The position numbers and the translations under genes are program-made. Below, piece by piece: positions 24,901 through 58,188 of a stretch of 64,000 bases of DNA. Numbering within the stretch: the first letter of the stretch is position 1; every line of letters starts with the position of its first letter. Under the pieces are notes generated by a model. It made no database searches and had not been told where the DNA came from. It saw only the letters and a program-made list of their open reading frames with translations. The stretch comes from Epiperipatus broadwayi (lineage: Eukaryota; Animalia; Onychophora), in NCBI GenBank assembly GCA_028023455.1, contig JAQFVV010000001.1, positions 1,612,001-1,676,000 on the forward strand. The letters run 5' to 3'.

Positions 24901-27900
24901 TGTTTGATTCTTTGTGCTTGTGTTGTTGATTGCTTCATCCTTCTTGCTATTGAACATGTTATTATCTATGTCTCTAACTAAATGCTTTATTACATTATTA
25001 TATTCTTGTTAATTGATCCCTACTATTATTTTTATTTATGCTTTCTTTTGGATTTATTATATTCTGTTTTCAAATTAGACCATCAATCTCAACTTTTCCC
25101 ATGCAATTCTCTCCAGTATTATGTAATATATCTGCATTTATTATTATTTTCTTTCTAATTATTCTGACATATATCAAGCTTTCTTCTGCCTATGTGGAGT
25201 CAAACTATAACTGTATTACAATGTTGGTCTATATCTTAAATTCTTGATGTTTATTTCCCATTCCAAACACTTTAATTCAATTTAGACATGCACATATTGC
25301 ATGCAATATAAAACATTATCTTCCACTATGTGTTCAACTTATTCATGGCCTAATGTTTGATACAACATATAATTCTAGAGATGGGGTGAAGCAGAAATAA
25401 GAAGATATTTCAAGCCACATATTGGTTGCACCAAATGTATCAGTTTTATCTATAATTATACATTTCTTACAATGCCTGTGACAGTAAAATGAAATGGTTC
25501 AGATTAAGTGTAATAAACACTGTAATGATAATGATCAAAATGATATTTGCACTCAGAAGATTAAATTCAGTCTAATTACTCCAAAAGCATTTATATTTCT
25601 TTTTTTAGGTTCTATTTAAATTAACATTAAACACTACTTTCTTTATAGAAAGAATATTTCCAGATGAATTATTATTTCGATGTATGTTTCTTATCCCAGA
25701 AATATCCCCCAGAAGATTGCATGACTTCTTAGATTTAGTGATATATTAATTGCATATGTTTGGAAAGAATTTGGGAGCAGCAAAATAACTAAATTTGATA
25801 ACAAAATAACAATACATTTATAATAATCATAAAATAAAATAAAAATATTGCTTATTTATTCTCAATTATTTTAAAATCATAAAATAAATACAAAACATTG
25901 AAATTAAAAAATATTCCTAAACATTAAATTTAAATATAGTTATAAATATACATAAGCCATACTAATATTAATTCTAATGTCTTATATTCAAATATAAAAG
26001 AACAATTTTATATAAAAAATATTTTTACCATGATTTTTGTTATTGCTATAATCTTACATTCTACCTAGTGTGCTAATCTTTAATAATAGTCCTTTAATGT
26101 TCTTAGATATCAATGACTGTAGACCAAGGAAATGAATGTTACTATAGGCAAGTGCATAATAGATCTCACAGCAGAATCATCTTCTTTTCTTATAACATGA
26201 TTTTCTTCTTGTAATCAGGCAAAGTTGTATTCTATGCACAAACAATATTCATATCTAAATAAAACTACATAGTTGTAGGTGTCTGAGTGGTTTTTCTTCA
26301 GTTCTTTAGCCACACATGACAAGTTGTTTTCTGGTAGAAAATATTGTCATAATTGCTATTAGACATAGTATGAAGAATACTTCTTAAACAGTCAGCAATG
26401 TAAAGCTATTCTAATCTGTAGAAAAACTATTTTAATTAATAGTCTCCCTTTTCAACTAAAGATAAAATTACATCACCTGCTGCATACTTATTCTTTGGCT
26501 GGTTGTAATCTTTCATCTTTTCTGATATCTTGCTGCTAACAACTGCTCTATTTCTCTTGGCATTTTCTCTCTTCTCTTCTGAAATCAGTCTGCACTGTTT
26601 TCTCTGATTCAAGACTAAAAATTACTGTTGTTCTCAGACTTATTTATAATTTTGTCTTATAGCAATGGCACCATATCCCATTATTTTCAGCTTTTGGATA
26701 TATTCTCCCACACTGGACAAACTAATTGATCCTGGATTAATTTACATTGGAACAATTCCCAAAACATCTTTATCTCGATTTTAAATACAATATTTTAATT
26801 ACAAAAAAAAAAACATGTTTCGTTCACATTCAGATTTTAATAATAGTTGTTTTCTAAATAATTATAAAATATCTTTTATTTATGGAGAGTGGGAAAAAAA
26901 ATAGAAAAAGAAAAAAATTATGACTGCACTGCAACATTCTTTTTCTAGGCTTTACATTAATCTATAAAACACCTTACTTTTTTTTAAATCCATATAACTA
27001 TATGCTTTGCATATATGTCTAACATATGCAGATATATATTGCAACCTATAAAATTACAAATCGATTTATATTATTTTATTATCTGTCTTTAATGTGACAA
27101 GTCAGCTTCATAATGCAAATGATGGTATTTACAATCAATTTGTATTGTTACAATATATAAATATATATGATCACATGGTTTTATTGCATAAATTACTTAA
27201 TGCATTATTAGACAGACAGTATTTTAAAACATATTGCAGGTCATTATTTGGATAAATAGAACAATATCTCTTATATTTTAATTAAAATAAAAAAAGCATC
27301 AGGACTAAAAATTTCCTTAAATATTATGTGTCCCCAGAACTAGTTTGGTTAGAATAAAAAATTCAGATAAAGGGCCATCGTATGAAGGTGTGCCAGTTGA
27401 GCAGGGCACAAAGGCATTTATCTACTGGGGCATCAAGACACCAAAGTAATAAATAAAATTTATATGCAAATAAAATTGTTTACATTTTCAAATCATTTCA
27501 TTGTTAGAAATATGTTCTGAAATATAAATGTTTTTTATTTAAATATAAATGAATACTTTTTGACTTAAACTTATTTGTGACAATTATCCAGGCTTCAAGT
27601 TTCTAGGCACGAGCTCAAAATTTACTACATATATACTCTTATCATTATGCCAAACCAAATGGATCGATGCCATTTTGTTTTGATAATTAATAAAAATTAT
27701 ACAAAAATGTTTAGATTTCTGAATCCCTTTATTCCTAGAAACACATTTTGATCATAAATATTTATTATTTAAATTATAAAAGAAAAAAATTTCTTTATTT
27801 AAACTTATTGTGGCAGTTACTCTAGCCTCAAAGTATATTTCATGTATACTGTGCCATTGCACAAAACTGAACAAGCTGATGCCCTTTCATCATTATAATT

Positions 27901-30900
27901 AATAAATTTATATGTACATTGTAATATATGTCTTGTTTTATAAGCAATCAAACTTTGCATGTTATTTCAATACATATGCTTACAATAAAAACTAACAGAA
28001 ATATGTAACAAAAAAAGAAATACAATAAAATAACTAAATGTTGAAATATAAAAAATAAATTTAAGTTTATGATTAGATTATGGCTTTTTTTCCTAAATCT
28101 TGATGAATAATGATGCCAAAATTCACTGATAAATCTTGATTTTAATTGCAATTATTCTTTGGGAGTACAAAAGATAGTCAATTTATTTGATTATATGATT
28201 TAGAAACTATGAATTTAGCTTTAGATCTGAAATATATGACTTTTAATCAGTAGTTTATATATGCCAATAAACATCACATGATCATCATTTCTTATGCTTG
28301 CTATGCAAAGCACTTTGGTTAGTGATATTATTTGAAAATGTGAAATTTTCATAATTGTTCGCAATTTCCAGTTTTTATATTTACAATAACCATGAAGTGT
28401 AAGGTCTTCTATTGCCAATAATTTTTCCATTATAAAGAATTTACAGACTTTCAGTTCCAATTTTTTTAAAAAGTAAAACTATGATGAGTTGCTTGAATGA
28501 TATTTACATATATATGCTTTTGGAGGAAGAATAATTGGTCACATTCATTCATTCTAATGACAATAAATTCAGATTCCAGCATATCTGATAAAATATAAAA
28601 TAATATTAAATTGTAAGATCTGACAAAATAGAAAGGTTTTATGTATTTATAACAAGAATTCTGTTCTAAATAAGAAAGGAAGAAAAATCAAATTCACTCT
28701 AAAAAAAGATCAGATTTAATAACCAATAGTTAAACTTTTAATGACTTGAGAAAAAATGTTTCAAATGTTCTATATTTGTAGCAATACATAACTTTGTATT
28801 TATTTAACTTTATATAATTCTTTATGTAATGAATGTATATTTTGCCATATATGGCTGTCACTTTAGTATTAATTATTTTATTTGTTGAATTAATGTTGAT
28901 TTTTTTTTATTAAAAATGTTTGATGAGATTTCATAAATGTGTGTGCACATTTATTCTTTACGATTTATATTCATTTACATAGTAATGAAAACTTTGGTAT
29001 GTAATATAAATAAATAATTATTATTTAGGTATTACATTTTTCCTGTCAAAAATGAAGTACAAATATCTTAATTCACATTATTTTAAAATCTCATGGAATT
29101 ATTACTATTATTACTTATAATCCCCCCCCCCCAATTCATTATCAGTCTAATTATATTGATATTTGTTATTTAATGATCTCATGAAACTAAATTCAGTAGT
29201 CATTGCATTGAATCTATTTCAATTTATCAGTTCACCTCTTTTATCAATGTACTTGAATAGAAATTAATCAGACATGAGAAAGAGAGAACAACAGATGGAA
29301 TCAAACAAGAGATAATGGATAATGTAAATTCTACCATTTTTGTTTACAAAATAAACAAATTAATTATCTCTAAGCATATTATTTGCATTGTTATATTACA
29401 TGGTGTCATTATGAGATTTGTTTTGTTTTAACACAGTGACATAAAGATAACAAGTGCAAGTTGTATTTAGTTTGATATAAATATTCTATCTGAATGCTAA
29501 ACTTTAATAAGAAATTGAAATTTTTTTATCCTTGTTTACACAATGAAATGTTCACTTTGTTGAGCAATACTGTATCTGTGTTTGGATTCAAAATAGAGAT
29601 CACACCAACCTGTCCTATCATTTCATACTTAAGTTGATATTTACACTGTATAATTAATTAAACTTTTTCAAATGCTTCATCTGCTATATTCCACCTTCTC
29701 AAGAATAGATACATGCTACTTATAGCTTTAATCATATCTTCAGTTGAACAAAAAAGTCTAATTTAAAATAAATACTAAAGCAAGATTTTGTTTAGATAAG
29801 TTATTTCCTTAGACTTTATAATCAATTATAATGGTAGTGAGAAACATATTAATTAAAAAATATAAAGAAAACATATTTTAAGACTCTTAATGATATTTTG
29901 ATTTTTATTATTAGATTCTCACGAATGCTGTCAGACTGGTTTTCTTTTTTATTTAGAAACGTTATTACAATTATTCAAAGTATGTGCAATTTATATAGTT
30001 TTAATTTTGAAAATATTTATTAGAAAGCATCAAACGTCTTATAATGTCGATGCATTGTATAAGCATACACTTTCTATAAATAGTATGTATAATTGGAGCT
30101 AAAATAGAAAATTTTATGTCTACATATCTAATATTGTTGTTGACTGTCTTGTTCTAATGCATATAAATCATGTAATTTTTATATAGTGACTAAAATACAT
30201 TTTACAAACATTCAAAAAATTCTTGTCATTAACATTTTCTCTAGTCTTAAATAGAACTGAATATTAATTAAACCTTTTTTGTTCTTGGTTTTTCAATAAT
30301 TTTGTTCTTAATAATTGGTTGGATATTATTTTCTTTTTCATCATCCATTCATGCTGAGAGTGAAGATATGTCTAGAGTCATCCATATTTTTTATTTTAGA
30401 TATGTCTAGAGTCATCCATATTTTTTATTTTAGTCATAGTATAAATATATTTTTAACTTATTGATAAACTTGAGATGAAATTTTTACTATGCATTTCCTT
30501 GTGTATTCACAATATACAGCTTATTTCATAAATAGATCTAATCATTTGTATTTCCAAAACACCCACTTGAACATTTATTAATTCCAGAATGATACTTCCA
30601 CATGTTTACATCATGACTATTATCCAAATATTAATATTTTTTTACATATTTATATGTTAAAGGTGCTCTATTTACACACATGCAATCATATTTCTAGTTA
30701 TGAAAACCTTCATTAATATAAATGAATAAACTTGGAGCATATGTATATATGCTTAATGAGGTTTTAATAAGAATGGCTATGATTATGATGGTTGACAATA
30801 ATAATGCATTAAACTAAATAAAACGAGACTGTTTCTTATTTTATACCTTGTAAAGCATATCTATATATGTGTGCTCCAAGTTTATTTTAATCATAATAAT

Positions 30901-32034
30901 AAGTATTATAGAAGCATTTGTTATCAAATTTCAGGCATTTAATGCTGACACCTTTTTAGGCAAAGTTTTGTCTGTGCACGTATATAAACCACTTTTAAAA
31001 ATATTCTCACTTTACTTCATATTTTATTAGTATTGGTAAATTTATAAGTGATAATAATTTATAGTCTGTCATAGTTTTAATTTTTTTTTATTTAAATAAC
31101 TTTTAAGGTTAAACATTCTTAAAGTAAATTTTCTAATGAAGATAAAGAAATTTAATTAGAAATACATTCAACAAGGGTGTTATTTAAATAGGATCGTAAT
31201 TATTTTATGCTTCTTTGAAAATCAACTTTATTATCAAAATAACATATGTTCAATTAAAATAAATCAACTTGATAAAATAGAAACATATTGTAAGGATTGA
31301 CATCATCCTCAAACAACCATCATTCATTCATTTTTGCTATTTAAAATAAACTTTATTTCTAAAATCATACTTTAATAACTATTATTTTATTTCACTTTTA
31401 AAGACATTTTTTTTCCTTTCGACAATTCTCATGGCATATCATTTATGTTTTATAAAATTTGTTTAAGAATACAATAAATTAATTTCACCTATATACTTCA
31501 CTGGCAAACATGTTTTAGTGTGATTTCACTTTTCTTTTATCTATTTTAAACAAATAATTTAATAACAAACTATTTTTTTTTCATTTATCCTTTAAAATAT
31601 TTCCATTTACATTTAATTTAGCAGTTCCACAAATTAATCTCTTATGTTTATTTAAAAAGACCAGAATTAATTATATAAACATTATAATAGGTAAATAATT
31701 TTAAAATGATACCTAAAACCAGTATTTTTATTTGCCATTTCAGATTTTAACATAGAAAAAGTCTAAATATTTTTACTACTTGGTAGATAATGGTAAATTT
31801 ATTCCTCTTTAATCTCAAAAGTGTTAGTTTCAGTGAATGAAAATAACTTAAATTTGATTTTTCTATATATATGTCTTCCTTTTATTAAGAATAAAAATTT
31901 TATAATTCATTGGAACAAATTATTTCAAGTACAGGAATAAAAATTTCAAAATATTTTTACTGTTTTATTTAATGACATATTATAATTAGCTTATAAATCA
32001 GTGTAATATCTATACATAATGAATTCCAAATACA

Positions 32035-32185
32035 ATACAAATACTTAGTATTTTCCTGAAGGTTTGTGATGATGGTGTTCTAGTTGTATTTTTATATTGG
32101 ACTATTTCCATCATCTAATATGTGTATTGAATGTCTTTAGAAAAATTTAACTTTATTTATATATTCCCAATACATTCAACTGTTA
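32035..32185 (-). mobile_element. Fragment of the same PLE pseudo-LTR as 830-975 (mirror at ~51630-51775, +)
   Basis: aacaccatcatcac(g/a)aaccttcaggaaaa and gaatgtatt.ggaatat.taaataaag are shared with 830-975. Confidence 0.75.
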
Positions 32186-34559
32186 TACTTTCCTATTTTG
32201 AGAGGTTTTAATATATTTGAGCCAAACAAGTCAGGTGAAAATCTTTTGAAAATTTATCTAGGAATATCATTTTATTCTTAAACCACTTTTATTTATCATT
32301 TGTATAAACAAATGAAGATAATAGAGTCAAATTGTTTTAAGAGATATTTGGTGATAGAAATGCAATAATCATTTTATGTTTCAATAAAAACTTTTTTTAG
32401 ACTGACTCATATTTTTAATCACATACTTTTTTTTATCTATTCATTGTCTAATTTTCACATTCTCTATTTATCTTTCCCCTTTTTATAAGCAGAACTATTT
32501 TTACCACAACTATAAAATAATGTATATGTAACTAAGTGAGAGGTCTCAAGAAATTTTGATTGAAAGGGTTTTAAAATGTGTTTTATAACTTAAAAAATGT
32601 TTTAAAACAGTGACATATGTATGCACACATATACATTTAAAATAATACAACTTAAACATTATTATTAGTGTTATTAAATAATAATTAAATTTAAAAATTT
32701 GTTTATTTTTGAAAATTAACCTGATATTTATTTTAAATATTTAATATTTTTCCTCTGATTTTATTTAATTTTAAATTGAATTCAAATTAAATTTAAACAA
32801 ATGTCATTACTCAATTCTTTTAGGATTATAGAAAAAAAAATGTAGGTTACCAAAATATTAAAATTTAAATTAAAATATTTTTTTTCTTTTTCAATTATAC
32901 CTTTTAAAACATAATGTATTTCGATATATAGCTTGGCCAGATTAAGCTCTATCATCTCTTATTCTCTTTAAATATAACAGATTACCAAATTTTCAATTAA
33001 TAAAATCTAATGTTTAAAAAAATAAAAATTGAGTAGAGAAAATTTATATAAAATTCAGATAATTTCAAATAAATATTTCAATTCCATTTAAAAAATGTTT
33101 ATGAAAAGTACATCTAAAAATATAATTAGAGGTCAAGTCAAAATTATATCTTTGTAACTTACGCAATTTTGTTAAATACTTGACAAGCTACAGGCATTTA
33201 TTTAAGCATGGATATTTTCACATAAGTTATGAAAAATTTAATTTTTCTTTAGTCTATATTATTAGTTGCTGAGATTGTCAATAGCTTAAGAATTGTTATT
33301 ATCATTTAATTTATAAACCTATTAAAGCCTTGAATAATTGGCTTTATTGTCTTAGTAAATTATTAGTTGTATATGTTTTATATAAAAGGGAATGGGGAAC
33401 TACTATTCATGGTGCAGTATATTTAGATCTATTCAATACTAATGAAGTAATAGCTTTACAAGTATTCGAAGAAATGTTTTGAATCTTTAATTAATACACT
33501 AATTATAGTATAAGTTTCCTACTAAGGAAGTTAAGAATGACTGAATAAATAAACAGAAAATCTCTCCTGGAAACTTGCTTTAGAATGTTAATGCATATCT
33601 GCATCTATAAAATGATATCAGAAGCCATAAAAAAAAAAAAAAACTATAGTCAGAAGTAATTAAATAGTGAAATAATGACATTAGCCATAAAAACCTATAG
33701 CTAGAATCAAAATGTAAAAAAAAAAAAAAACTAGTCAAAGTTATTTAAATGTAAATTGCTTATTTGACACACTAAGTGATCAATAATGTAAACTAGAAAT
33801 ATTTGAAAAATTTCTTGGCAAAATAATATCGCCCAAGCAAACAGCCCATGTTTTGTCATAATTCATCAAAGCTGTGGTTTTAGTTAGAAAAAAATTAGTC
33901 AATAAAATATACAACTTAATATAGCATGTTTACCAAAATAAATTAATAATACCATAACATCAAAGCTACAATACATAATAAACATTTTTGTAAAAAATTT
34001 CCAAATCATTATAATCCAAGATTTACTCCAAGAAAATAAACTATAGGTGATTTTTTGAACTTAAATTTAGGCTGATAAAAGTTTTTCTCTCTTGAATAAT
34101 TTCACAAATAATTTATATATTTTTTATGCTTTGTTTAGAATATATATTAAATATTTTATTATAAGTTTTTTTTTTATGTATTATAATGTAACAAGAAGTG
34201 ATGTATATTTGAAATGGGCATTATTAATGTATAAAAAAAGAACATCGAAAGACAGTAATTTGTATCTTTTTTTTTCTCTCTTTCTTGTTAAACAATTATA
34301 TTTAAATATGCATTCTCTCTTAATTTTTATTAAAAATGAAAACAAATATAGATTACATATATATAAATAAATAGATAGATAAATGGTGAAAGAAAAGTAT
34401 TCACAAACATATTAACAGGCAAAATTTTGATTTAGTGTTTAAAAGTAATATAATAATATAAAAATGTAGAATAGGTAGCTATTATATTTTAGTATTTATA
34501 AATTTCAATCAAAATGCTTAATAATTTAATGATAAAAATAGAAAATTAAAAGTTTATAA

Positions 34560-34990
34560 AAAACTAAGACCTTTTAAAACTAATTTGTATACATAACAAA
34601 TATATACTATCCAGATATGAAAACCTACATCAGTGTAAGATCAGAGAAGCTATTGAGATACTAAAAAGATCTAACTGTATCAACAAATGCAATGACACAT
34701 GTAAATTTCCTTCTATTTGGAAATTTTTTTGAAAAATAATTTACTCTGAAGATTCTGAATTTTTTTATTTGTTGTTTATTAATTTTTATTTATTTTTCAA
34801 TTTGTTCAATTTTATACACTTGTCTTTTCTAGTTGTGAAACTTTAATAATTATTGTAAACACTATTTGCAGCATCTCTACAACTATCTTTATAGACACTA
34901 TTTACAGCACCTTTACAGTTATAGAGTATTCATTTCTAGTTGAGGGCTTGTGTGATCAAGTCAAAACGTTGGAATATCTAATAAAAATCT
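34560..34990 (+). mobile_element. Another PLE 3' fragment (GIY-YIG C-terminus plus degenerate HHR); mirror at ~48820-49250
   Basis: ENLHQCKIREAIEILKRSNCINK...FPSIWKFF, then TTGAGGG-CTTG-tgtgat-CAAGTC-AAAACGTT-GGAA at ~34940-34974 (a decayed CTGANGA/stem II/GAAACGTT). Confidence 0.6.
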
Positions 34991-35559
34991 TACATGGATG
35001 TACCCACAAAATACGATTTTTATATGTTGAACCAGGTAGGAGATAGTTCGAATAAAAAAAAATATTCTATAATTTTTTTTACTTTAATAAAAACAAATTG
35101 TGAAAAACATTGTTGACTTCTTTTGTATATAAAATATGACAAATTATTTATTATAAATTCGATCTATTCCAGCTGCAATTTAGTATTGCATCACACCGGC
35201 CCCTCAGGCAGAGAAAAATACCCAGAGGGTACCTATAGCCAGACTGAAATTATACAAGGTATAATTTAGTCACATTTCTAAGCTGCAGGACTTCTCCTGC
35301 TGCTGAATTCAAACCCTGTCATTCAAAGCACTTTGTTTTGCAGTAAACTTTGTAGGCCAGTTAATTACAAGAAGTAACTAACATGCTCTGTATGACAGCC
35401 ATCAACTCAGCAGCTGAATATCCCAACTAACTCAATCAAAAAAATATATATAATAAATTGCTTTAATTAGTGGTATTAGTAAAAGAATTGACTGACAAAA
35501 TTTATTTAAAACTTTAAATTAACTTAAGACCCAATTTACCATCTCTTCCCTAAATAAAA

Positions 35560-36120
35560 CAATAATTACGTATTATATATCAGGCACACATATTATAAAT
35601 TCACATACAGCATTAAAAATATTATATATGCCAAACACACATTTTATCATACGCTATTTTTTTGTACGATTCGGAAAGTTCTAGAAATATTTTTGCTGAT
35701 TATACTAACTCTGCATATAAAGTTCTTTTATGCTAGTTAAGAGTTCAGTTCTGTTAATTCTGAATATTTCAAAGATTGAAATGGCTACAATAATAAATTA
35801 CTGACACGATAGGAATGGGAATAAAGAATAATTAATATTACCTATAGGTTTTCATATACATGATCCTGGATAGACGGCTGCTTCTTTCTCCTGTGTGATG
35901 CGTGTTGTATCAACCGGTTGGAATTTGGATAGCTGACGAAAGTTATTCCTTGCTGCATTTCAGTCCGGCAGACATATGTTCGAATAGCCCAGGTTGTTAT
36001 ATGTTCATTGTGTCTAGTTATAGACCTTCAGATATTCTACGGTGATCAAAGATTGGAGTACAGTGGCATACTTTGACTTCTGATTAGCAACGCATGTTTT
36101 CTTGGAGTTCACAAAAAATA
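35560..36120 (-). promoter_or_regulatory. CpG-enriched island, candidate promoter/5' exon (mirror at ~47690-48245, +)
   Basis: About a dozen CpGs in ~550 bp against a CpG-poor background; AG|GTAATA donor-like site at 47967/47968 (mirror 35842). There is no direct evidence of transcription. Confidence 0.3.
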
Positions 36121-39480: not shown

Positions 39481-40568
39481 TTTTTGATAAATAAATTATT
39501 TTTATTGCTAAATATATATTATTTTTTAGATTTTATTTTTGATGTAAATTCAAAAATAAATTCATAATTTTATTAATTTTTTTAATTATTGTCATGCACA
39601 ATGTAGCTCTGTCTAATGGTCAGACCTCAGACTACATGAACACTCAAAGAGCATTTTTAATTTCAAAAATAATCATTTTTGAAATCAAACTTTCATGGTC
39701 TACCAATTCCCTTTTGATAAAATGGAAATTCCCACTTTTTTAAAATAAATGAATGAATAAATAAAGCTATTATAGAAGTAATTTCCACTGTCTTTCACAA
39801 AAAACAACAACTCAGGATTAAAATACAGTACAAAACAATTTGGATAGGAAAAACAAAACCATAAAAAATAATTCTAAGCTGAAGCAAAAAATGAATAATA
39901 ATAAGCCTTTATCTGCATTAATAAAAAAACAAACAGATGTGCTTGATAGTATAAAATAAGTCATATGGCAATGGAAGATGAATAGTAAAAGATATAGTTG
40001 AGATGAAAACTAGAAAATTACAAAGAACTGATGAAATTGTTGTGGAATTACTACAGGCTAGGAGAAAAAATATATGCTAATATTTGTAATATTGTTATGG
40101 AACATAGATAATATATTTTCTTTCAATAATTATTATTCTTTTAAAGAAAAATATAATGTGAAGAATTTATGGAGATTGAATCTCAAAATGCAGCTAAGAT
40201 ATTACTGAGAGTATAGTATACATGTTATAAAATATTAGACCAGTTATCTAAAAATATGCTATTGAAGTGGTGAAGATTATTATTAATACATATAAAAACA
40301 AAAAAAAGAGCTAATATTAATAATGAAATAACAATAAATTGAATTATTTTGTTGAAGAAAAATATAAATAGAAAGAAAATGAAAAAAATATTATGAAATA
40401 TATTTTTTAAAAAAGACTTCATGAAAAAAAAACTTTTCTTTTTAAATTGAATTATGAATATAAGTTTATACTTTCTTTTAATAATTTATATTGTAATAAC
40501 CAGCCTATCTGAGGATATCTATTCATTAGAATAGAATATTATAAAAAGGACCAATGATGAGCAATGTT

Positions 40569-45200: not shown

Positions 45201-48200
45201 AATGGCAATAGGTGTTTTAGCTAAGAGCAGTCCATAAATTCCAGATGACTGACCAAATATAAATCCATAAGAAATGAAATTCTTAAATAAACCAATTCAT
45301 AGCATAGCAGCAAGTGTATTAAATAAAAGCATCAGATATTTCAAATTAAGCAATTCATAACAAATAAAATGCACATATGAGCCAAAACATGATGCATTTA
45401 GGAAAATAATGAAAGATATGCATATCAAAAAATGAGCACAGGCCAAAGCATACATTTCTTAAATTGCAATCAGCAAAAATTTCACACTTCACTACAGAAT
45501 GGTACTATAACATTAACTTAAAACACTAGACTATCATGCTTACTTCATAAGAACCATGAAATTTAGATTGTCTATAATGTAAGAAATATATGCTTTGTGG
45601 GAGGGGGGGTTACTTGCATTTTATTTGTTGTGGATTGCTTTCATTTAAAATACATGTACTTTTATTTAATACACTTGCTGTGCTATGAATGGGTTTCTTT
45701 TATGGATTTGCATTTGGTCTTATACCTGTATTTTCATTATTATGGATTGCTTTTACTTAATTGTCATCAACTATATATATTTTTAATACAGTATTTTGTG
45801 CTTGTTTTTATCAAGGAAATATAATGGTAATCAAAATAACTAGTGGCAATTTAAACTTCATTAACTGAATTAAATGAACAAATAATAACATCCCTCAATA
45901 TATTTAAAATGTTCTCATTTATCATTAATGAATTTCAGACTACTTAAAGAATTGATTACTCCAGCTTGCTGTGTGTGGCAATATATACAGTGAGTTTTGT
46001 CTGTTTTAAGGAATATATGTAGTTCAATTATAACTTCAAATTTTTACTCTATCACTTTCTAAATATTAAAATAGGCAAAACTCTCTATACGTATTGCCAC
46101 TCAGTGCAAGCCAGAGTAATCAATGGATGCCGGAAGCCTTATGCATATAATCCCCATCTAGTGCCTACTCACTTTCTAAATATGTTATCACTGATTTTTA
46201 AACTTTCTATTCACAATTGATTCCTATTAAACTAATATGAAATGACTGAATATCTCATATCTACAGATTCTAAATAAATTAGCTACTGAGTTGAACTGGC
46301 TTATGTTCTGGGCAGATTATATACAATGCATGGCACTCAATATTTCTTTTTATCTCATTGAAGTATAACTTCTCTTATTTTCTTAACATTTTTAAGGATG
46401 TATTCTCATTCTGGCCCACTTAATGGTATGCAATATACTAAAAATTTTGATTACACCATTCTTTAACCATTATAAGATGGAAAAATAATGACAATGTATT
46501 CATCATTTAGTTGGGTATTATTCATATTGTAATAAATATCAACTTAATTTTCATATAATAATAAATTATATATAATGACTATCACCCTACAAAGCAGATC
46601 AAACATAATTAAAATAAGACTTAAAATGTTAGTTTTAATCTTGTATATGTTTAACTTTCAATTGAATTTAATTTGTAAATTGTATATATTTAACCTTCAG
46701 TTGAATTTAATTTGTAAAAAAATTAAATTATTTTCTACAATATTTTAAAAGTTATTAAATATATTTTAGAATATGTTAAGTTTTTATATTAAAAAGTTAG
46801 AAGTCTGAATCTCCACTTTATTAGGTTTTTTCCTATGCTATATGGGTTGTTTTAAATTCTGAAAACATTAATGCACATAAAATTAAATAAATATTATTTA
46901 ATTAATAAAATTACCATTAAAATGTTTAAATATAAAAATAAAATTTTAAATTAAATAACTTTTTTTTTTTTACAAGCATCATGTAAAATATTTCAATTGC
47001 ATTATGCTGGGAGTTTGTGAATTAAGAATTTTTTGCTTTCTTGAGGAAACTTGACATCTCCATGCAAACCATATAAATTCATATTTATAAAAAAAAAAAC
47101 TTGACCAGGAGAAAATCAGATTGATGAAGTGATTATTACTACATAATATACCAGAAGTGAACAAAATGAACAGTCACTACCACTGATGAGTATCTAATCA
47201 ATAATGAGTAAATTTAATTACTTCAATTTTGCATTTTATATTCTAATCTTGTTATTAATAAAACATTTTTATCATAGTATTACATTTATTTATAGCTCAT
47301 TTTATTAAATTAAAAATAACTTTATTCTGATATTTTTTTTTCTATTCACACACACATATATATTGCACTGTTATTACATGTCTGTAATTTTTATTAAAAA
47401 ATTAAGATAAAAATAAATTATAAGTGGCTTAATTTAAAGATTTTTTAAAAAAATAAACTACATCATAGTTTTCTCTTAGAATAAAACTTCTTAGTGAGAG
47501 GGGGGGGAAATGTTTATGATAGAACTAAAGAAAGGTTAAAATTTTTTCTCTCTTTTTAAAGAAAAGAGCTTTTATAAAGTAAAAACTAAATAAATATGCA
47601 ATATTTAAAATAAAATTTGTTTGTAAAAAAAAACTTTGTCAGCAGCAGATCAGATCTTTTAGCTTATTCCAGTTTGTAAAAATAAAATTATTTTTTGTGA
47701 ACTCCAAGAAAACATGCGTTGCTAATCAGAAGTCAAAGTATGCCACTGTACTCCAATCTTTGATCACCGTAGAATATCTGAAGGTCTATAACTAGACACA
47801 ATGAACATATAACAACCTGGGCTATTCGAACATATGTCTGCCGGACTGAAATGCAGCAAGGAATAACTTTCGTCAGCTATCCAAATTCCAACCGGTTGAT
47901 ACAACACGCATCACACAGGAGAAAGAAGCAGCCGTCTATCCAGGATCATGTATATGAAAACCTATAGGTAATATTAATTATTCTTTATTCCCATTCCTAT
48001 CGTGTCAGTAATTTATTATTGTAGCCATTTCAATCTTTGAAATATTCAGAATTAACAGAACTGAACTCTTAACTAGCATAAAAGAACTTTATATGCAGAG
48101 TTAGTATAATCAGCAAAAATATTTCTAGAACTTTCCGAATCGTACAAAAAAATAGCGTATGATAAAATGTGTGTTTGGCATATATAATATTTTTAATGCT

Positions 48201-51200
48201 GTATGTGAATTTATAATATGTGTGCCTGATATATAATACGTAATTATTGTTTTATTTAGGGAAGAGATGGTAAATTGGGTCTTAAGTTAATTTAAAGTTT
48301 TAAATAAATTTTGTCAGTCAATTCTTTTACTAATACCACTAATTAAAGCAATTTATTATATATATTTTTTTGATTGAGTTAGTTGGGATATTCAGCTGCT
48401 GAGTTGATGGCTGTCATACAGAGCATGTTAGTTACTTCTTGTAATTAACTGGCATCCAAAGTTTACTGCAAAACAAAGTGCTTTGAATGACAGGGTTTGA
48501 ATTCAGCAGCAGGAGAAGTTCTGCAGCTTAGAAATGTGACTAAATTATACCTTGTATAATTTCAGTCTGGCTATAGGTACCCTCTGGGTATTTTTTTCTG
48601 CCTGAGGGGCCGGTGTGATGCAATACTAAATTGCAGCTGGAATAGATCGAATTTATAATAAATAATTTGTCATATTTTATATACAAAAGAAGTCAACAAT
48701 GTTTTTCACAATTTGTTTTTATTAAAGTAAAAAAAATTATTCTATATTTTTTTTTTATTCGAACTATCTCCTACCTGGTTCAACATATAAAAATCGTATT
48801 TTGTGGGTACATCCATGTAAGATTTTTATTAGATATTCCAACGTTTTGACTTGATCACACAAGCCCTCAACTAGAAATGAATACTCTATAACTGTAAAGG
48901 TGCTGTAAATAGTGTCTATAAAGATAGTTGTAGAGATGCTGCAAATAGTGTTTACAATAATTATTAAAGTTTCACAACTAGAAAAGACAAGTGTATAAAA
49001 TTGAACAAATTGAAAAATAAATAAAAATTAATAAACAACAAATAAAAAAATTCAGAATCTTCAGAGTAAATTATTTTTCAAAAAAAATTTCCAAATAGAA
49101 GGAAATTTACATGTGTCATTGCATTTGTTGATACAGTTAGATCTTTTTAGTATCTCAATAGCTTCTCTGATCTTACACTGATGTAGGTTTTCATATCTGG
49201 ATAGTATATATTTGTTATGTATACAAATTAGTTTTAAAAGGTCTTAGTTTTTTATAAACTTTTAATTTTCTATTTTTATCATTAAATTATTAAGCATTTT
49301 GATTGAAATTTATAAATACTAAAATATAATAGCTACCTATTCTACATTTTTATATTATTATATTACTTTTAAACACTAAATCAAAATTTTGCCTGTTAAT
49401 ATGTTTGTGAATACTTTTCTTTCACCATTTATCTATCTATTTATTTATATATATGTAATCTATATTTGTTTTCATTTTTAATAAAAATTAAGAGAGAATG
49501 CATATTTAAATATAATTGTTTAACAAGAAAGAGAGAAAAAAAAAGATACAAATTACTGTCTTTCGATGTTCTTTTTTTATACATTAATAATGCCCATTTC
49601 AAATATACATCACTTCTTGTTACATTGTAATACATAAAAAGAAAACTTATAATAAAATATTTAATATATATTCTAAACAAAGCATAAAAAATATATAAAT
49701 TATTAGTGAAATTATTCAAGAGAGAAAAACTTTTATCAGCCTAAATTTAAGTTCAAAAAATCACCTATAGTTTATTTTCTTGGAGTAAATCTTGGATTAT
49801 AATGATTTGGAAATTTTTTACAAAAATGTTTATTATGTATTGTAGCTTTGATGTTATGGTATTATTAATTTATTTTGGTAAACATGCTATATTAAGTTGT
49901 ATATTTTATTGACTAATTTTTTTCTAACTAAAACCACAGCTTTGATGAATTATGACAAAACATGGGCTGTTTGCTTGGGCGATATTATTTTGCCAAGAAA
50001 TTTTTCAAATATTTCTAGTTTACATTATTGATCACTTAGTGTGTCAAATAAGCAATTTACATTTAAATAACTTTGACTAGTTTTTTTTTACATTTTGATT
50101 CTAGCTATAGGTTTTTATGGCTAATGTCATTATTTCACTATTTAATTACTTCTGACTATAGTTTTTTTTTTTTTTTATGGCTTCTGATATCATTTTATAG
50201 ATGCAGATATGCATTAACATTCTAAAGCAAGTTTCCAGGAGAGATTTTCTGTTTATTTATTCAGTCATTCTTAACTTCCTTAGTAGGAAACTTATACTAT
50301 AATTAGTGTATTAATTAAAGATTCAAAACATTTCTTCGAATACTTGTAAAGCTATTACTTCATTAGTATTGAATAGATCTAAATATACTGCACCATGAAT
50401 AGTAGTTCCCCATTCCCTTTTATATAAAACATATACAACTAATAATTTACTAAGACAATAAAGCCAATTATTCAAGGCTTTAATAGGTTTATAAATTAAA
50501 TGATAATAACAATTCTTAAGCTATTGACAATCTCAGCAACTAATAATATAGACTAAAGAAAAATTAAATTTTTCATAACTTATGTGAAAATATCCATGCT
50601 TAAATAAATGCCTGTAGCTTGTCAAGTATTTAACAAAATTGCGTAAGTTACAAAGATATAATTTTGACTTGACCTCTAATTATATTTTTAGATGTACTTT
50701 TCATAAACATTTTTTAAATGGAATTGAAATATTTATTTGAAATTATCTGGATTTTATATAAATTTTCTCTACTCAATTTTTATTTTTTTAAACATTAGAT
50801 TTTATTAATTGAAAATTTGGTAATCTGTTATATTTAAAGAGAATAAGAGATGATAGAGCTTAATCTGGCCAAGCTATATATCAGAAATACATTATGTTTT
50901 AAAAGGTATAATTGAAAAAGAAAAAAAAAATATTTTAATTTATATTTTAATATTTTTGGTAACCTACATTTTTTTCTATAATCCTAAAAGAATTGAGTAA
51001 TGACATTTGTTTAAATTTAATTTGAATTCAATTTAAAATTAAATAAAATCAGAGGAAAAATATTAAATATTTAAAATAAATATCAGGTTAATTTTCAAAA
51101 ATAAACAAATTTTTAAATTTAATTATTATTTAATAACACTAATAATAATGTTTAAGTTGTATTATTTTAAATGTATATGTGTGCAGTACATAGTGTCACT

Positions 51201-54200
51201 GTTTTAAAACATTTTTAAAGTTATAAAACACATTTTAAAACCCTTTCAATCAAAAATTTCTTGAGACCTCTCACTTAGTTACATATACATTATTTTATAG
51301 TTGTGGTAAAAATAGTTCTGCTTATAAAAAGGGGAAAGATAAATAGAGAATGTGAAAATTAGACAATGAATAGATAAAAAAAAGTATGTGATTAAAAATA
51401 TGAGTCAGTCTAAAAAAAGTTTTTATTGAAACATAAAATGATTATTGCATTTCTATCACCAAATATCTCTTAAAACAATTTGACTCTATTATCTTCATTT
51501 GTTTATACAAATGATAAATAAAAGTGGTTTAAGAATAAAATGATATTCCTAGATAAATTTTCAAAAGATTTTCACCTGACTTGTTTGGCTCAAATATATT
51601 AAAACCTCTCAAAATAGGAAAGTATAACAGTTGAATGTATTGGGAATATATAAATAAAGTTAAATTTTCTAAAGACATTCAATACACATATTAGATGATG
51701 GAAATAGTCCAATATAAAAATACAACTAGAACACCATCATCACAAACCTCAGGAAAATACTAAGTATTTGTATTGTATTTGGAATTCATTATGTATAGAT
51801 ATTACACTGATTTATAAGCTAATTATAATATGTCATTAAATAAAACAGTAAAAATATTTTGAAATTTTTATTCCTGTACTTGAAATAATTTGTTCCAATG
51901 AATTATAAAATTTTTATTCTTAATAAAGAAGGAAGACATATATATAGAAAAATCAAATTTAAGTTATTTTCATTCACTGAAACTAACACTTTTGAGATTA
52001 AAGAGGAATAAATTTACCATTATCTACCAAGTAGTAAAAATATTTAGACTTTTTCTATGTTAAAATCTGAAATGGCAAATAAAAATACTGGTTTTAGGTA
52101 TCATTTTAAAATTATTTACCTATTATAATGTTTATATAATTAATTCTGGTCTTTTTAAATAAACATAAGAGATTAATTTGTGGAACTGCTAAATTAAATG
52201 TAAATGGAAATATTTTAAAGGATAAATGAAAAAAAAATAGTTTGTTATTAAATTATTTGTTTAAAGTAGATAAAAGAAAAGTGAAATCACACTAAAACAT
52301 GTTTGCCAGTGAAGTATATAGGTGAAATTAATTTATTGTATTCTTAAACAAATTTTATAAAACATAAATGATATGCCATGAGAATTGTCCGAAAGGAAAA
52401 AAAAATGTCTTTAAAAGTGAAATAAAGTAATAGTTATTAAAGTATGATTTTAGAAATAAAGTTTATTTTAAATAGCAAAAATGAATGAATGATGGTTGTT
52501 TGAGGATGATGTCAATCCTTACAATATGTTTCTATTTTATCAAGTTGATTTATTTTAATTGAACATATGTTATTTTGATAATAAAGTTGATTTTCAAAGA
52601 AGCATAAAATAATTACGATCCTATTTAAATAGCACCCTTGTTGAATGTATTTCTAATTAAATTTCTTTATCTTCATTAGAAAATTTACTTTAAGAATGTT
52701 TAACCTTAAAAGTTATTTAAATAAAAAAAAATTAAAACTATGACAGACTATAAATTATTATCACTTATAAATTTACCAATACTAATAAAATATGAAGTAA
52801 AGTGAGAATATTTTTAAAAAGTGGTTTATATACGTGCACAGACAAAACTTTGCCTAAAAAGGTGTCAGCATTAAATGCCTGAAATTTGATAACAAATGCT
52901 TCTATAATACTTATTATTATGATTAAAATAAACTTGGAGCACCCATATATAGATATGCTTTACAAGGTATAAAATAAGAAACAATCTCGTTTTATTTAGT
53001 TTAATCATTATTATTGTCATCCATCATAATCATAGCCATTCTTATTAAACCTCATTAAGCATATATACATATGCTCCAAGTTTATTCATTTATATTAATG
53101 AAGGTTTTCATAACTAGAAATATGATTGCATGTGTGTAAATAGAGCACCTTTAACATATAAATATGTAAAAAAATATTAATATTTGGATAATAGTCATGA
53201 TGTAAACATGTGGAAGTATCATTCTGGAATTAATAAATGTTCAAGTGGGTGTTTTGGAAATACAAATGATTAGATCTATTTATGAAATAACCTGTATATT
53301 GTGAATACACAAGGAAATGCATAGTAAAAATTTCATCTCAAGTTTATCAATAAGTTAAAATATATTTATACTATGACTAAAATAAAAAATATGGATGATC
53401 GAATTATTGGAAGATTTAAGGTTGTCACCATAAAAAGAAATTTATAATATTGACTCTAGACATATCTTCACTCTCAGCATGAATGGATGATGAAAAAGAA
53501 AATAATATCCAACCAATTATTAAGAACAAAATTATTGAAAAACCAAGAACAAAAAAGGTTTAATTAATATTCAGTTCTATTTAAGACTAGAGAAAATGTT
53601 AATGACAAGAATTTTTTGAATGTTTGTAAAATGTATTTTAGTCACTATATAAAAATTACATGATTTATATGCATTAGAACAAGACAGTCAACAACAATAT
53701 TAGATATGTAGACATAAAATTTTCTATTTTAGCTCCAATTATACATACTATTTATAGAAAGTGTATGCTTATACAATGCATCGACATTATAAGACGTTTG
53801 ATGCTTTCTAATAAATATTTTCAAAATTAAAACTATATAAATTGCACATACTTTGAATAATTGTAATAACGTTTCTAAATAAAAAAGAAAACCAGTCTGA
53901 CAGCATTTGTGAGAATCTAATAATAAAAATCAAAATATCATTAAGAGTCTTAAAATATGTTTTCTTTATATTTTTTAATTAATATGTTTCTCACTACCAT
54001 TATAATTGATTATAAAGTCTAAGGAAATAACTTATCTAAACAAAATCTTGCTTTAGTATTTATTTTAAATTAGACTTTTTTGTTCAACTGAAGATATGAT
54101 TAAAGCTATAAGTAGCATGTATCTATTCTTGAGAAAGTGGAATATAGCAGATGAAGCATTTGAAAAAGTTTAATTAATTATACAGTGTAAATATCAACTT

Positions 54201-57200
54201 AAGTATGAAATGATAGGACAAGTTGGTGTGATCTCTATTTTGAATCCAAACACAGATACAGTATTGCTCAACAAAGTGAACATTTCATTGTGTAAACAAG
54301 GATAAAAAAATTTCAATTTCTTATTAAAGTTTAGCATTCAGATAGAATATTTATATCAAACTAAATACAACTTGCACTTGTTATCTTTATGTCACTGTGT
54401 TAAAAACAAAACAAATCTCATAATGACACCATGTAATATAACAATGCAAATAATATGCTTAGAGATAATTAATTTGTTTATTTTGTAAACAAAAATGGTA
54501 GAATTTACATTATCCATTATCTCTTGTTTGATTCCACTTCCTGATTTTTAAATGCTTTCCATCTGTTGTTCTCTCTTTCTCATGTCTGATTAATTTCTAT
54601 TCAAGTACATTGATAAAAGAGGTGAACTGATAAATTGAAATAGATTCAATGCAATGACTACTGAATTTAGTTTCATGAGATCATTAAATAACAAATATCA
54701 ATATAATTAGACTGGATAATGAATTGGGCCCGGGGGATTGTAAGTAATAATAGTAATAATTCCATGAGATTTTAAAATAATGTGAATTAAGATATTTGTA
54801 CTTCATTTTTGACAGGAAAAATGTAATACCTAAATAATAATTATTTATTTATATTACATACCAAAGTTTTCATTACTAGTAAATGAATATAAATGTAAAG
54901 AATAAATGTGAACACACATTTATGAAATCTCATCAAACATTTTTAATAAAAAAAAATCAACATTAATTCAACAAATAAAATAATTAATACTAAAGTGACA
55001 GCTATATATGGCAAAATATACATTCATTACATAAAGAATTATATAAAGTTAAATAAATACGAAGTTATGTATTCTACAAATATAGAACATTTGAAACATT
55101 TTTTCTCAAGTCATTAAAAGTTTAACTATTGGTTATTAAATCTGATCTTTTTTTAGAGTGAATTTGATTTTTCTTCCTTTCTTATTTAGAATCAGAATTC
55201 TTGTTATAAATACATAAAACCTTTCTATTTTGTCAGATCTTACAATTTAATATGGTATTTATATATTTTATCAGATATGCTGGAATCTTAAATGTTATTG
55301 TCATTAGAATGAATGAATGTGACCAAATTATTCTTCCTCCAAAAGCATATATATGTAAATATCATTCAAGCAACTCATCTAGTTTTACTTTTTAAAAAAT
55401 TGGAACTGGAAAGTCTGTAAATTCTTTATAATGGAAAAATTATTGGCAATAGAAGACCTTACACTTCATGGTTATTGTAAATATAAAAACTGGAAATTAA
55501 GAACAATTATGAAAATTTCACATTTTCAAATAATATCACTAACCAAAGTGCTTTGCATAGCAAGCATAAGAAATGATGATCATGTGATGTTTATTGGCAT
55601 ATATAAACTACTGATTAAAGAGTCATATATTTCAGATCTAAAGCTAAATTCATAGTTTCTAAATCATATAATCAAATAAATTGACTATCTTTTGTACTCC
55701 CAAAGAATAATTGCAATTAAAATCAAGATTTTATCAGTGAATTTTGGCATCATTATTCATCAAGATTTAGGAAAAAAAGCCATAATCTAATCATAAACTT
55801 AAATTTATTTTTTATATTTCAACATTTAGTTATTTTATTGTATTTCTTTTTTTGTTACATATTTCTGTTAGTTTTTATTGTAAGCATATGTTTTGAAATA
55901 ACATGCAAAGTTTGATTGCTTATAAAACAAGACATATATTACAATGTACATATAAATTTATTAATTATAATGATGAAAGGGCATCAACTTGTTCAGTTTT
56001 GTGCAATGGCACAGTATACATGAAATATACTTTGAGGCTAGAGTAATGTGCCACAATAAGTTTAAATAAAGAAATTTTTTCTTTTATAATTTAAATAATA
56101 AATATTTATGATCAAAATGTGTTTCTAGGAATAAAGGGATTCAGAAATCTAAACATTTTTGTATAATTTTTATTAATTATCAAAACAAAATGGCATCGAT
56201 CCATTTGGTTTGGCATAATGATAAGAGTATATATGTAGTAAATTTTGAGCTCATGCCTAGAAACTTGAAGCCTGGATAATTGTCACAAATAAGTTTAAGT
56301 CAAAAAGTATTCATTTATATTTAAATAAAAAACATTTATATTTCAGAACATATTTCTAACAATGAAATGATTTGAAAATGTAAACAATTTTATTTGCATA
56401 TAAATTTTATTTATTACTTTGGTGTCTTGATGCCCCAGTAGATAAATGCCTTTGTGCCCTGCTCAACTGGCAGCACCTTCATACGATGGCCCCTTTATCT
56501 GAATTTTTTATTCTAACCAAACTAGTTCTGGGGACACATAATATTTAAGGAAATTTTTTAGTCCTGATGCTTTTTTATTTTAATTAAAATATAGGAGATA
56601 TTGTTCTATTTATCCAAATAATGACCTGCAATATGTTTTAAAATACTGTCTGTCTAATAATGCATTAAGTAATTTATGCAATAAAACCATGTGATCATAT
56701 ATATTTATATATTGTAACAATACAAATTGATTGTAAATACCATCATTTGCATTATGAAGCTGACTTGTCACATTAAAGACAGATAATAAAATAATATAAA
56801 TCGATTTGTAATTTTATAGGTTGCAATATATATCTGCATATGTTAGACATATATGCAAAGCACCTAGTTATATGGATTTAAAAAAAAGTAAAGGTGTTTT
56901 ATAGATTAATGTAAAGCCTAGAAAAAGAATGTTGCAGTGCAGTCGTAATTTTTTCTTTTTCTTATTTTTTTTCCCACTCTCCATAAATAAAAGATATTTT
57001 ATAATTATTTAGAAAACAACTATTATTAAAATCTGAATGTGAACAGAAACATGTTTTTTTTTTGTAATTAAAATATTGTATTTAAAATCGAGATAAAGAT
57101 GTTTTGGGAATTGTTCCAATGTAAATTAATCCAGGATCAATTAGTTTGTCCAGTGTGGGAGAATATATCCAAAAGCTGAAAATAATGGGATATGGTGCCA

Positions 57201-58188
57201 TTGCTATAAGACAAAATTATAAATAAGTCTGAGAACAACAACAGTAATTTTTAGTCTTGAATCAGAGAAAACAGTGCAGACTGATTTCAGAAGAGAAGAG
57301 AGAAAATGCCAAGAGAAATAGAGGCAGTTATTAGCAGCAAGATATCAGAAAAGGTGAAAGATTACAACCAGCCAAAGAATAAGTATGCAGCAGGTGATGT
57401 AATTTTATCTTTAGTTGAAAAGGGAGACTATTAATTAAAATAGTTTTTCTACAGATTAGAATAGCTTTACATTGCTGACTGTTTAAGAAGTATTCTTCAT
57501 ACTATGTCTAATAGCAATTATGACAATATTTTCTACCAGAAAACAACTTGTCATGTGTGGCTAAAGAACTGAAGAAAAACCACTCAGACACCTACAACTA
57601 TGTAGTTTTATTTAGATATGAATATTGTTTGTGCATAAGAATACAACTTTGCCTGATTACAAGAAGAAAATCATGTTATAAGAAAAGAAGATGATTCTGC
57701 TGTGAGATCTATTATGCACTTGCCTATAGTAACATTCATTTCCTTGGTCTACAGTCATTGATATCTAAGAACATTAAAGGACTATTGGTAAAAGATTAGC
57801 ACACTGGGTAGAATGTAAGATTATAGCAACAAAAATCATGGTAAAAATATTTTTTATATAAAATTGTTCTTTTATATTTGAATATAAGACATTAGAATTA
57901 ATATTAGTATGGCTTATGTATATTTATAACTATATTTAAATTTAATGTTTAGGAATATTTTTTAATTTCAATGTTTTGTATTTATTTTATGATTTTAAAA
58001 TAATTGAGAATAAATAAGCAATATTTTTATTTTATTTTATGATTATTATAAATGTATTGTTGTTTTGTTATCAAATTTAGTTATTTTGCTGCTCCCAAAT
58101 TCTTTCCAAACATATGCAATTAATATATCACTAAATCTAAGAAGTCATGCAATCTTCTGGGGGATATTTCTGGGATAAGAAACATACA
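42288..58188 (-). repeat. Right arm of the ~32.5-kb inverted repeat, ending at the assembly gap
   Basis: Same anchors. The inner end tatgtgatgaaataaattaa (42288) pairs with ttaatttatttcatcacata (ending 41558). Confidence 0.95.

What the first reader, a model, noticed from the sequence alone, without database searches (positions are those of the whole stretch)
25681..58188. Giant (~32.5 kb) palindrome with ~15.9-kb arms and a 729-bp spacer
Half the window is one inverted duplication centred near 41,920. The outer arms look roughly 98% identical by eye but differ by substitutions, homopolymer indels and several 25-55 bp indels, which looks more like biological divergence than raw read error. 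The right arm stops exactly at a 500-N gap and the sequence beyond the gap is not a continuation. Two readings are open: a real large palindrome (hairpin-primed duplication or gene-conversion-maintained arms), or the assembler turning back at the central inverted repeat into the other haplotype.
Basis: partly seen in the sequence, partly recalled or inferred. Interest (0 to 1): 0.78.

Follow-up and report, generated by a model that had tools for sequence, protein, structure and literature searches.

The report
Fold-back assembly artefact at contig end
The 32.5-kb "palindrome" is really in the sequence, but it is most likely a single-copy, gene-free stretch of an AT-rich animal genome written twice, the second time backwards, because a nanopore assembly folded back on itself at the end of a contig; it is probably not a biological palindrome.

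Summary
Observation confirmed: 25681-41558 pairs in reverse complement with 58188-42288. The spacer is 729 bp and the right arm stops at a 500-N gap.

Interpretation: most likely (about 0.8) an assembly artefact.

1. The centre is a piggyBac-like non-coding transposon (40568-42239), 48 unique bases, then an inverted partial copy of that transposon.
2. With 24 family copies and a 98.8%-identical paralogue (contig C3185) as outgroups, the right inner arm has 105-120 private substitutions and the left arm has 1. The private changes are clustered and have no donor elsewhere. Arms that diverged naturally would share the changes about equally.
3. The excess divergence starts at 40212, where high-identity repeat copies begin. 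The unique sequence next to it is about 99.5% identical between arms.
4. The contig after the gap opens with an untrimmed Oxford Nanopore adapter. The same 22-mer occurs 159 times in the assembly, many at contig tips, so contig ends here rest on single raw reads.
5. The arm DNA occurs nowhere else in the 5.6-Gb assembly.

Outer-arm differences (0.48% substitutions, microhomology-flanked indels) look like real variants and fit the other allele.

Read depth and junction-spanning reads would settle it. The scan's earlier notes hold no similar case on other DNA.

The parts
25681..40211 (+). Left arm, unique part. Gene-free, AT-rich DNA with two old embedded repeat fragments (27372-27928 and 35013-36186).
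   Evidence: Found only twice in the 5.6-Gb assembly, namely the two arms. No ORF longer than 92 aa.
40212..40567 (+). 356-bp segment upstream of the transposon. It is shared at about 99% with unplaced contig C3185. The excess arm divergence begins here.
40568..42239 (+). One copy of a dispersed, non-coding, piggyBac-like DNA transposon family of about 1.7 kb. Family copies begin CCCTTAGAG and end CTCTAAGGG, mostly next to TTAA-like tetranucleotides; this copy lacks the leading CCC. Its 3' 681 bp form almost all of the 'spacer'.
   Evidence: 93-97% identical to dozens of copies genome-wide. Termini seen in 18 copies. No Pfam hit and no Rfam family.
42240..42287 (+). 48 unique bases after the transposon's TTAA, probably the true downstream flank. 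The fold-back junction lies between 42287 and 42288.
   Evidence: No other copy in the genome apart from a 32-bp chance-level hit. No adapter remnant. No microhomology visible at the junction in the printed sequences.
42288..43643 (-). Right inner arm: an error-dense reverse copy of 41558-40212 (the transposon's 5' 990 bp plus the 356-bp segment).
   Evidence: 89% to the left arm and at most 87% to any other copy. Private substitutions 105-120 against 1. Changes are clustered. The changed patches have no donor elsewhere.
43644..58188 (-). Right outer arm: reverse copy of 40211-25681, differing by 0.48% substitutions plus indels. It ends at the contig end.
58189..58688 (.). 500-N scaffold gap.
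58689..58716 (+). Untrimmed Oxford Nanopore ligation-adapter read start at the first bases of the next contig (exact 22-mer at 58695-58716).
   Evidence: Adapter sequence as printed in bioRxiv 10.1101/2022.07.07.499093. 159 exact copies in the assembly against 0 for the reversed control.

Best explanation
This is an assembly artefact. The organism most likely has one copy of the 14.5-kb unique stretch, followed by a piggyBac-like transposon and then unknown downstream DNA. In this Oxford Nanopore assembly the contig was extended past the transposon by one, or very few, fold-back (inverted chimeric) molecules. Such a molecule reads the locus forward to 42287 and then reads the same locus backwards from 41558 out to 25681, where the molecule and therefore the contig end. 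The junction lies at 51% of the 32.5-kb structure, as expected if both strands of one 16.6-kb fragment were read in a row. Later consensus and polishing cleaned the right arm wherever reads could be placed. The right arm there carries a mix of real allelic variants and residual 1-bp errors. The part with near-identical copies elsewhere (the transposon plus the 356 bp shared with C3185) stayed at about raw-read accuracy. Shown: the anatomy, the one-sided excess of changes, the coincidence with the repeat boundary, the ONT adapters at contig tips, and the absence of any third copy. Inferred: that only one or a few reads support the junction, how the chimera formed during library preparation, and that the right outer arm represents the other allele.
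For: (1) Relative-rate test on 40274-41558. With contig C3185 as outgroup there are 120 right-private and 1 left-private substitutions. With 24 family copies (majority at least 70%) the counts are 105 and 1. The binomial p is about 3e-30 for the 1-in-106 split seen with the family copies. 15-17 shared derived sites show that the two arms are sister copies. (2) The left arm is 98.8% identical to C3185 but only about 89% to its own partner, while flanking unique DNA is about 99.5% identical between arms. (3) Right-private changes come in dense patches separated by clean runs of up to 96 bp. There are 54 neighbour distances of 3 bp or less, against a simulated mean of 31.5 and a maximum of 49 in 2000 simulations. 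Two test patches match nothing better than 76-81% anywhere in the genome. (4) The excess divergence begins between 40200 and 40400, at the edge of the high-identity repeat (40212). (5) The right arm ends exactly at the contig end. The next contig starts with an ONT adapter, and the same exact 22-mer occurs 159 times, many at contig positions 4-28, so contig tips here are untrimmed single reads. (6) Error-like 1-2-bp indel differences rise towards the contig end: 39 in the outer 6 kb against 18 in 8.5 kb (p = 4e-5), although homopolymer runs are fewer there. Substitutions stay flat. (7) There is no third copy or overlap of arm DNA anywhere. The flank left of 25681 is single copy. (8) Literature: fold-back artefacts are about 0.55-0.6% of ONT genomic reads, are symmetric about the read midpoint, and can carry sequence between the two halves (PMC12870357). 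False duplications typically sit next to gaps (PMC9516828).
Against: No reads were available, so neither depth nor junction support was measured. The two halves are offset by 729 bp. This is outside the 200-bp default used to call ONT fold-back artefacts in PMC12870357. No adapter lies at the junction, so this is not a simple template-then-complement read-through. The outer arms differ by clean, microhomology-flanked 18-40-bp indels and an 8-bp tandem duplication. The few outer differences that could be polarised are symmetric, 3 left against 4 right. That pattern fits two alleles but would equally fit two real paralogous arms. Assemblers also tend to break contigs at the outer edge of real long repeats.
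Confidence: 0.8

Rival explanations
1. A real, young germline palindrome. A fold-back inverted duplication of about 16 kb occurred 48 bp beyond a transposon. The arms have diverged by about 0.5% or are kept similar by arm-to-arm gene conversion. The assembler broke the contig at the outer repeat boundary, and the poor right inner arm is only a local consensus failure.
For: The structure is in the sequence. Outer-arm differences look biological and are roughly symmetric. Contig breaks at repeat edges are common. An earlier scan note (s1-085779, not checked by me) reports a real 8.6-kb palindrome elsewhere in this genome.
Against: Real sister arms should share private changes about equally, not 105-120 against 1. 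In a real palindrome both transposon copies would have equal read support and equal mappability, so only one being degraded is unexpected. A paralogue on another contig is closer to the left arm than its own partner is. No neighbouring contig overlaps the outer arm end.
Confidence: 0.12
2. A real but rare fold-back rearrangement, somatic or present on only a small fraction of molecules in the sequenced tissue. It was captured by a few reads and then promoted into the contig.
For: It explains low support at the junction together with a genuine 729-bp offset and no adapter at the junction. Fold-back inversions with spacers of this size are a known product of break repair (general knowledge).
Against: It cannot be told apart from a library-preparation chimera using sequence alone. 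No microhomology is visible at the junction. The prior is low compared with about 0.5% artefactual fold-back reads in ONT libraries.
Confidence: 0.05
3. Two independent insertions of the same transposon family in opposite orientation form a real central inverted repeat, and the assembler turned back at it by false overlap.
For: The family is abundant. The right copy is more diverged from the family (about 86%), as an older insertion would be.
Against: 17 of the left copy's 18 departures from the family majority are shared with the right copy. The right copy also continues through the same 356-bp non-family segment and the same flank as the left copy. It is therefore a copy of the left locus, not a separate insertion. 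Seven family loci examined with 1.5-kb flanks have no inverted partner.
Confidence: 0.03

Closest known systems
Fold-back (inverted chimeric) artefact reads in Oxford Nanopore genomic libraries (Heinz, Meyerson and Li 2026, PMC12870357; see also PMC13141652)
   Same: ONT data. The second half maps back on the opposite strand of the same locus. The junction is near the midpoint (51.1%). No adapter is needed at the junction. The paper's example read B has about 2 kb of sequence between its two halves.
   Different: The halves are offset by 729 bp, against the paper's 200-bp calling default. Here the artefact is seen after assembly and polishing, not in a read, and read-level support could not be checked.
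False duplications in genome assemblies, heterotype (retained allele) and homotype (read error) (Ko et al. 2022, PMC9516828; Rhie et al. 2021, PMC8081667)
   Same: Two copies of single-copy DNA on one scaffold, abutting a gap. The differences resemble heterozygous variants in one part and read errors in another.
   Different: The copies here are inverted and joined without a gap inside one contig. The classic cases are separate contigs placed side by side.
Genuine large genomic palindromes, such as the ampliconic palindromes of primate sex chromosomes (general knowledge, not tested here)
   Same: Arm length in the tens of kb and a short unique spacer.
   Different: Those have arm identity above 99.9% maintained by gene conversion, unique sequence beyond both arms, usually genes, and both arms equally well supported. 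Here the arms are 98.4% identical, falling to about 89% near the centre. The divergence is one-sided, there are no genes, and one arm ends at a contig tip.

Membership tests
ONT fold-back artefact (Breakinator definition, PMC12870357) | The data come from Oxford Nanopore ligation libraries. | tested here: met
   An exact 22-nt ONT adapter read start lies at 58695-58716. The assembly holds 159 copies against 0 for the control.
ONT fold-back artefact (Breakinator definition, PMC12870357) | The second segment lies on the opposite strand within 200 bp of the end of the first. | tested here: not met
   The strand is opposite, but the offset is 729 bp (42287 to 41558). The paper does show a read with about 2 kb between its halves.
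ONT fold-back artefact (Breakinator definition, PMC12870357) | The junction lies within 10% of the midpoint of the molecule. | tested here: met
   16,607 nt lie before the junction and 15,901 nt after it, so it sits at 51.1%. A real palindrome cut at its arm end would also meet this test.
ONT fold-back artefact (Breakinator definition, PMC12870357) | The junction is supported by one or very few reads and is absent from other data. | not testable with these tools
   No reads were available. Indirect evidence only: junction-proximal sequence at about raw-read accuracy on one arm.
False duplication (Ko et al. 2022) | Half or lower read depth on the duplicated copies. | not testable with these tools
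   No reads or k-mer spectra were available.
False duplication (Ko et al. 2022) | A gap adjoins the duplicated pair on the same scaffold. | tested here: met
   A 500-N gap starts at the last base of the right arm.
False duplication (Ko et al. 2022) | Copy-specific variants behave as alleles (1-copy k-mers). | tested here: inconclusive
   The variants look biological: microhomology-flanked indels and a tandem duplication. They are symmetric in polarity. Allelic and paralogous origins cannot be separated without reads.
Genuine evolutionary palindrome | Both arms are flanked by unique sequence. | tested here: not met
   The right arm ends at a contig end. No contig overlaps or continues it.
Genuine evolutionary palindrome | Divergence since duplication is shared about equally by the arms. 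| tested here: not met
   1 against 105-120 private substitutions in the part that can be polarised well. The outer arms give 3 against 4, too few to carry weight.
Genuine evolutionary palindrome | Arm identity is uniform or highest where gene conversion acts, and independent of whether the DNA is repeated elsewhere. | tested here: not met
   Identity drops from about 99.5% to about 89% exactly at the boundary of the sequence that has copies at least 95% identical elsewhere.
Penelope-like or hammerhead head-to-head insertion (lead from earlier scan notes) | The family inserts as an inverted pair with a short tail and a target duplication, and carries a hammerhead motif. | tested here: not met
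   Seven other loci of the central family examined with 1.5-kb flanks have no inverted partner. No Rfam family was found in the window at gathering score. The termini are piggyBac-like.

The most novel reading that the evidence does not exclude
The palindrome is real: a young 32.5-kb fold-back inverted duplication of gene-free DNA in an invertebrate genome. Its turn-round point would lie 48 bp beyond a piggyBac-like transposon, which could point to a transposase-made break repaired by fold-back replication. The right inner arm would be degraded only by assembly problems specific to inverted repeats.
Probability: 0.12. Interest if true: 0.45.

Novelty: not a real feature. Interest (0 to 1): 0.1.

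Why it matters
For biology it matters little: the arms carry no genes and the duplication is probably not in the animal.

It matters as quality control. About 16 kb of this scaffold is probably spurious. The true sequence downstream of 42287 is missing or displaced. The assembly also retains at least 159 raw ONT adapter copies at contig tips. Other contig ends may therefore carry similar fold-backs, which would be miscounted as inverted segmental duplications or palindromes.

The relative-rate test used here takes dispersed repeat copies inside the arms as outgroups. It is a read-free way to flag such artefacts in other windows of the scan.

Tried and rejected
1. Penelope-like or hammerhead head-to-head insertion, a lead from earlier scan notes. 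Seven family loci examined with 1.5-kb flanks have no inverted partner, there is no Rfam hit, and the termini are piggyBac-like.
2. Independent older insertion of the same transposon as the right inner arm. Rejected by the shared flank and the 17 shared derived sites.
3. Right-arm patches copied or mis-polished from other family members. No donor better than 76-87% exists.
4. Left copy artificially pulled towards the family consensus. It keeps 17 private sites, and it matches C3185 in a segment that is not part of the family.
5. Adapter remnant at the junction or at the pre-gap end. None above the null distribution.
6. Search for the true downstream sequence using the 48 unique bases. Only a 32-bp chance-level hit was found.
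7. Third copy, haplotig or debris continuing the palindrome. None found.
8. Excess of non-homopolymer insertions in the right outer arm. 13 against 7, not significant, so it is not used as evidence.
9. Sampling other small contigs and contig ends for fold-backs.
10. Earlier scan notes on similar giant palindromes at gaps. None found.
11. Species identification was not attempted, since no named reference was within reach. The window is not human-like: 26% G+C in a 5.6-Gb invertebrate-type genome.

Full report
OBSERVATION

The inverted duplication exists as described. The repeat finder returns 25 collinear inverted blocks. BLAST and a global alignment pair 25681-41558 with 58188-42288 around a 729-bp spacer at 41559-42287. 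The window's only N run is 58189-58688, exactly 500 N, and it begins immediately after the last base of the right arm.

The window is 26% G+C. It lies at 1.61-1.68 Mb of a 35-Mb scaffold in a 5.6-Gb assembly of 18,588 pieces. This is a large AT-rich animal genome, not a human one.

ANATOMY OF THE ARMS

- Outer 13.9 kb (25681-39577): 98.4% identical, with 67 substitutions (0.48%) and 68 indels, 49 of them 1 bp. Over the whole arm alignment 72 of 114 indels are homopolymer-type.
- Larger indels: these are clean events. They comprise an 8-bp tandem duplication and 18-, 25- and 40-bp indels flanked by 4-6 bp of microhomology. They are real sequence variants, not base-calling noise.
- Coding content: no ORF exceeds 92 aa in the arms.
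- Copy number: the arm DNA occurs exactly twice in the whole assembly, namely the two arms. The exceptions are two old embedded repeat fragments. The flank left of 25681 is single copy.

THE CENTRE

- 40568-42239 is one copy of a dispersed, non-coding family of about 1.7 kb, 93-97% identical to dozens of copies.
- Family copies begin CCCTTAGAG and end CTCTAAGGG, mostly next to TTAA-like tetranucleotides, so the family looks piggyBac-like. This copy lacks the leading CCC. This classification is tentative.
- The family has no Pfam or Rfam match. Seven loci of the family examined with 1.5-kb flanks have no inverted partner.
- A further 356 bp upstream (40212-40567) is shared, together with the element, with unplaced contig C3185. 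That contig is 98.8% identical to the left arm over 1,294 bp and then diverges.
- After the element's 3' TTAA come 48 unique bases (42240-42287) found nowhere else.
- The right arm then starts at the reverse complement of 41558, inside the element.
- The 'spacer' is therefore the element's 3' 681 bp plus those 48 bases.

KEY TEST

Divergence between the arms is not uniform. It is about 0.5% out to 40200 and then jumps to 9.2% difference events over 40212-41558. That stretch is exactly the part with near-identical copies elsewhere in the genome.

I used those copies as outgroups to polarise the differences.
- With 24 family copies: 105 substitutions private to the right arm and 1 private to the left.
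- With C3185: 120 private to the right arm and 1 private to the left.
- The binomial p is about 3e-30 for the 1-in-106 split seen with the family copies.
- 15-17 derived sites are shared by both arms.

The right inner arm is therefore a sister copy of the left one that carries essentially all the change. Several further results agree.
- It is 89% identical to the left arm and at most 87% to anything else.
- Its changes come in dense patches separated by clean runs of up to 96 bp, more clustered than any of 2000 simulations.
- Two test patches have no donor anywhere in the genome.

Two arms that diverged naturally would share the changes about equally. They would also not be less alike than a paralogue on another contig while their adjacent unique DNA is 99.5% identical. 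The pattern is what one expects if the junction-proximal right arm rests on one or very few raw reads, and if later polishing worked only where reads could be placed.

TECHNOLOGY AND CONTIG TIPS

- The contig after the gap begins with AAACTTCTTCGTTCAGTTACGTATTGCT.
- Its last 22 bases match exactly the Oxford Nanopore ligation-adapter read start, as printed in bioRxiv 10.1101/2022.07.07.499093.
- That 22-mer occurs 159 times in the assembly, against 0 for the reversed control. Many copies sit at contig positions 4-28.

This is therefore an ONT assembly whose contig tips are untrimmed single reads, which is the setting in which a chimeric read can extend a contig.

In addition, error-like 1-2-bp indel differences between the arms increase towards the contig end. 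There are 39 in the outer 6 kb against 18 in the inner 8.5 kb (p = 4e-5), despite fewer homopolymer runs in the outer part. Substitutions stay flat.

MECHANISM (INFERRED)

One fragment of about 16.6 kb (25681-42287) was read forward and then backwards from 41558. This gives a 32.5-kb fold-back read with its junction at 51.1% of its length. The assembler used it to extend the contig, which ends where the read ends.

Fold-back artefacts make up about 0.55-0.6% of ONT genomic reads. They are symmetric about the read midpoint, they arise in library preparation, and they can carry sequence between the halves (PMC12870357).

The outer-arm differences are symmetric where they can be polarised (3 left against 4 right) and look biological. 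They fit the right arm representing the other allele, or a differently resolved mixture of alleles. This is the heterotype false duplication described by Ko et al. (PMC9516828).

WHAT DOES NOT FIT NEATLY

- The 729-bp offset exceeds the 200-bp default used to call such artefacts.
- No adapter lies at the junction, and no microhomology is visible there. A simple template-then-complement read-through is therefore excluded. A library-preparation snap-back or a rare real fold-back molecule has to be assumed.
- Without reads I cannot measure depth or junction support.

A real young palindrome therefore keeps about 12%, and a rare somatic fold-back about 5%.

However, there is no independent central inverted repeat. 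The inner arms are the same fold-back running through one transposon copy and its flank.

VERDICT

The feature is most likely not real biology (confidence 0.8). Interest is low, apart from its use as an assembly-quality flag and as a read-free test for such artefacts.

Noticed in passing
window 58689-58716; also G000-wide (for example C49:6-27, C215:7-28, C432:4-25): Untrimmed Oxford Nanopore ligation-adapter sequence at contig starts and ends. The assembly holds 159 exact copies of the 22-mer against 0 for the reversed control. This is adapter contamination of the deposited assembly.
   Followed up: partly
window 40568-42239; loci L005-L010 and L023-L042: An abundant, non-coding DNA transposon family of about 1.7-2.2 kb. 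It has CCCTTAGAG...CTCTAAGGG termini next to TTAA-like sites (piggyBac-like) and an internal array of about 160-210-bp tandem units whose number varies between copies.
   Followed up: partly
G000:C3185:1-1995 (L004, L043): A 13.6-kb unplaced contig starts inside a copy of the same element. The copy, together with 356 bp of upstream non-family sequence, is 98-99% identical to the window's copy, and the contig then diverges. This is either a longer composite element or a small segmental duplicate.
   Followed up: partly
window 18933-21431 and 58719-59910: Two LINE fragments of one family, 91% identical. Pfam finds the endonuclease domain (Exo_endo_phos_2) at 18933-19577 and a reverse-transcriptase domain at 58794-59096. 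A further weak reverse-transcriptase hit, below Pfam's cut-off, lies at 1952-2341.
   Followed up: partly
window 17190-17686: A near-perfect hairpin with 240-nt arms, 99% complementary, and a 17-nt loop. An earlier scan note calls it a Penelope-like hammerhead pair. Rfam at gathering score found no hammerhead anywhere in the window.
   Followed up: partly
window 12503-13244: An inverted repeat with 303-nt arms, 87% complementary, and a 136-nt spacer. It was not examined.
   Followed up: no
window 27372-27928 and 35013-36186 (mirrored in the right arm): Fragments of two older dispersed repeat families, 80-86% identical to many copies genome-wide, are embedded in the arms. They served as outgroups for polarising outer-arm differences.
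   Followed up: partly
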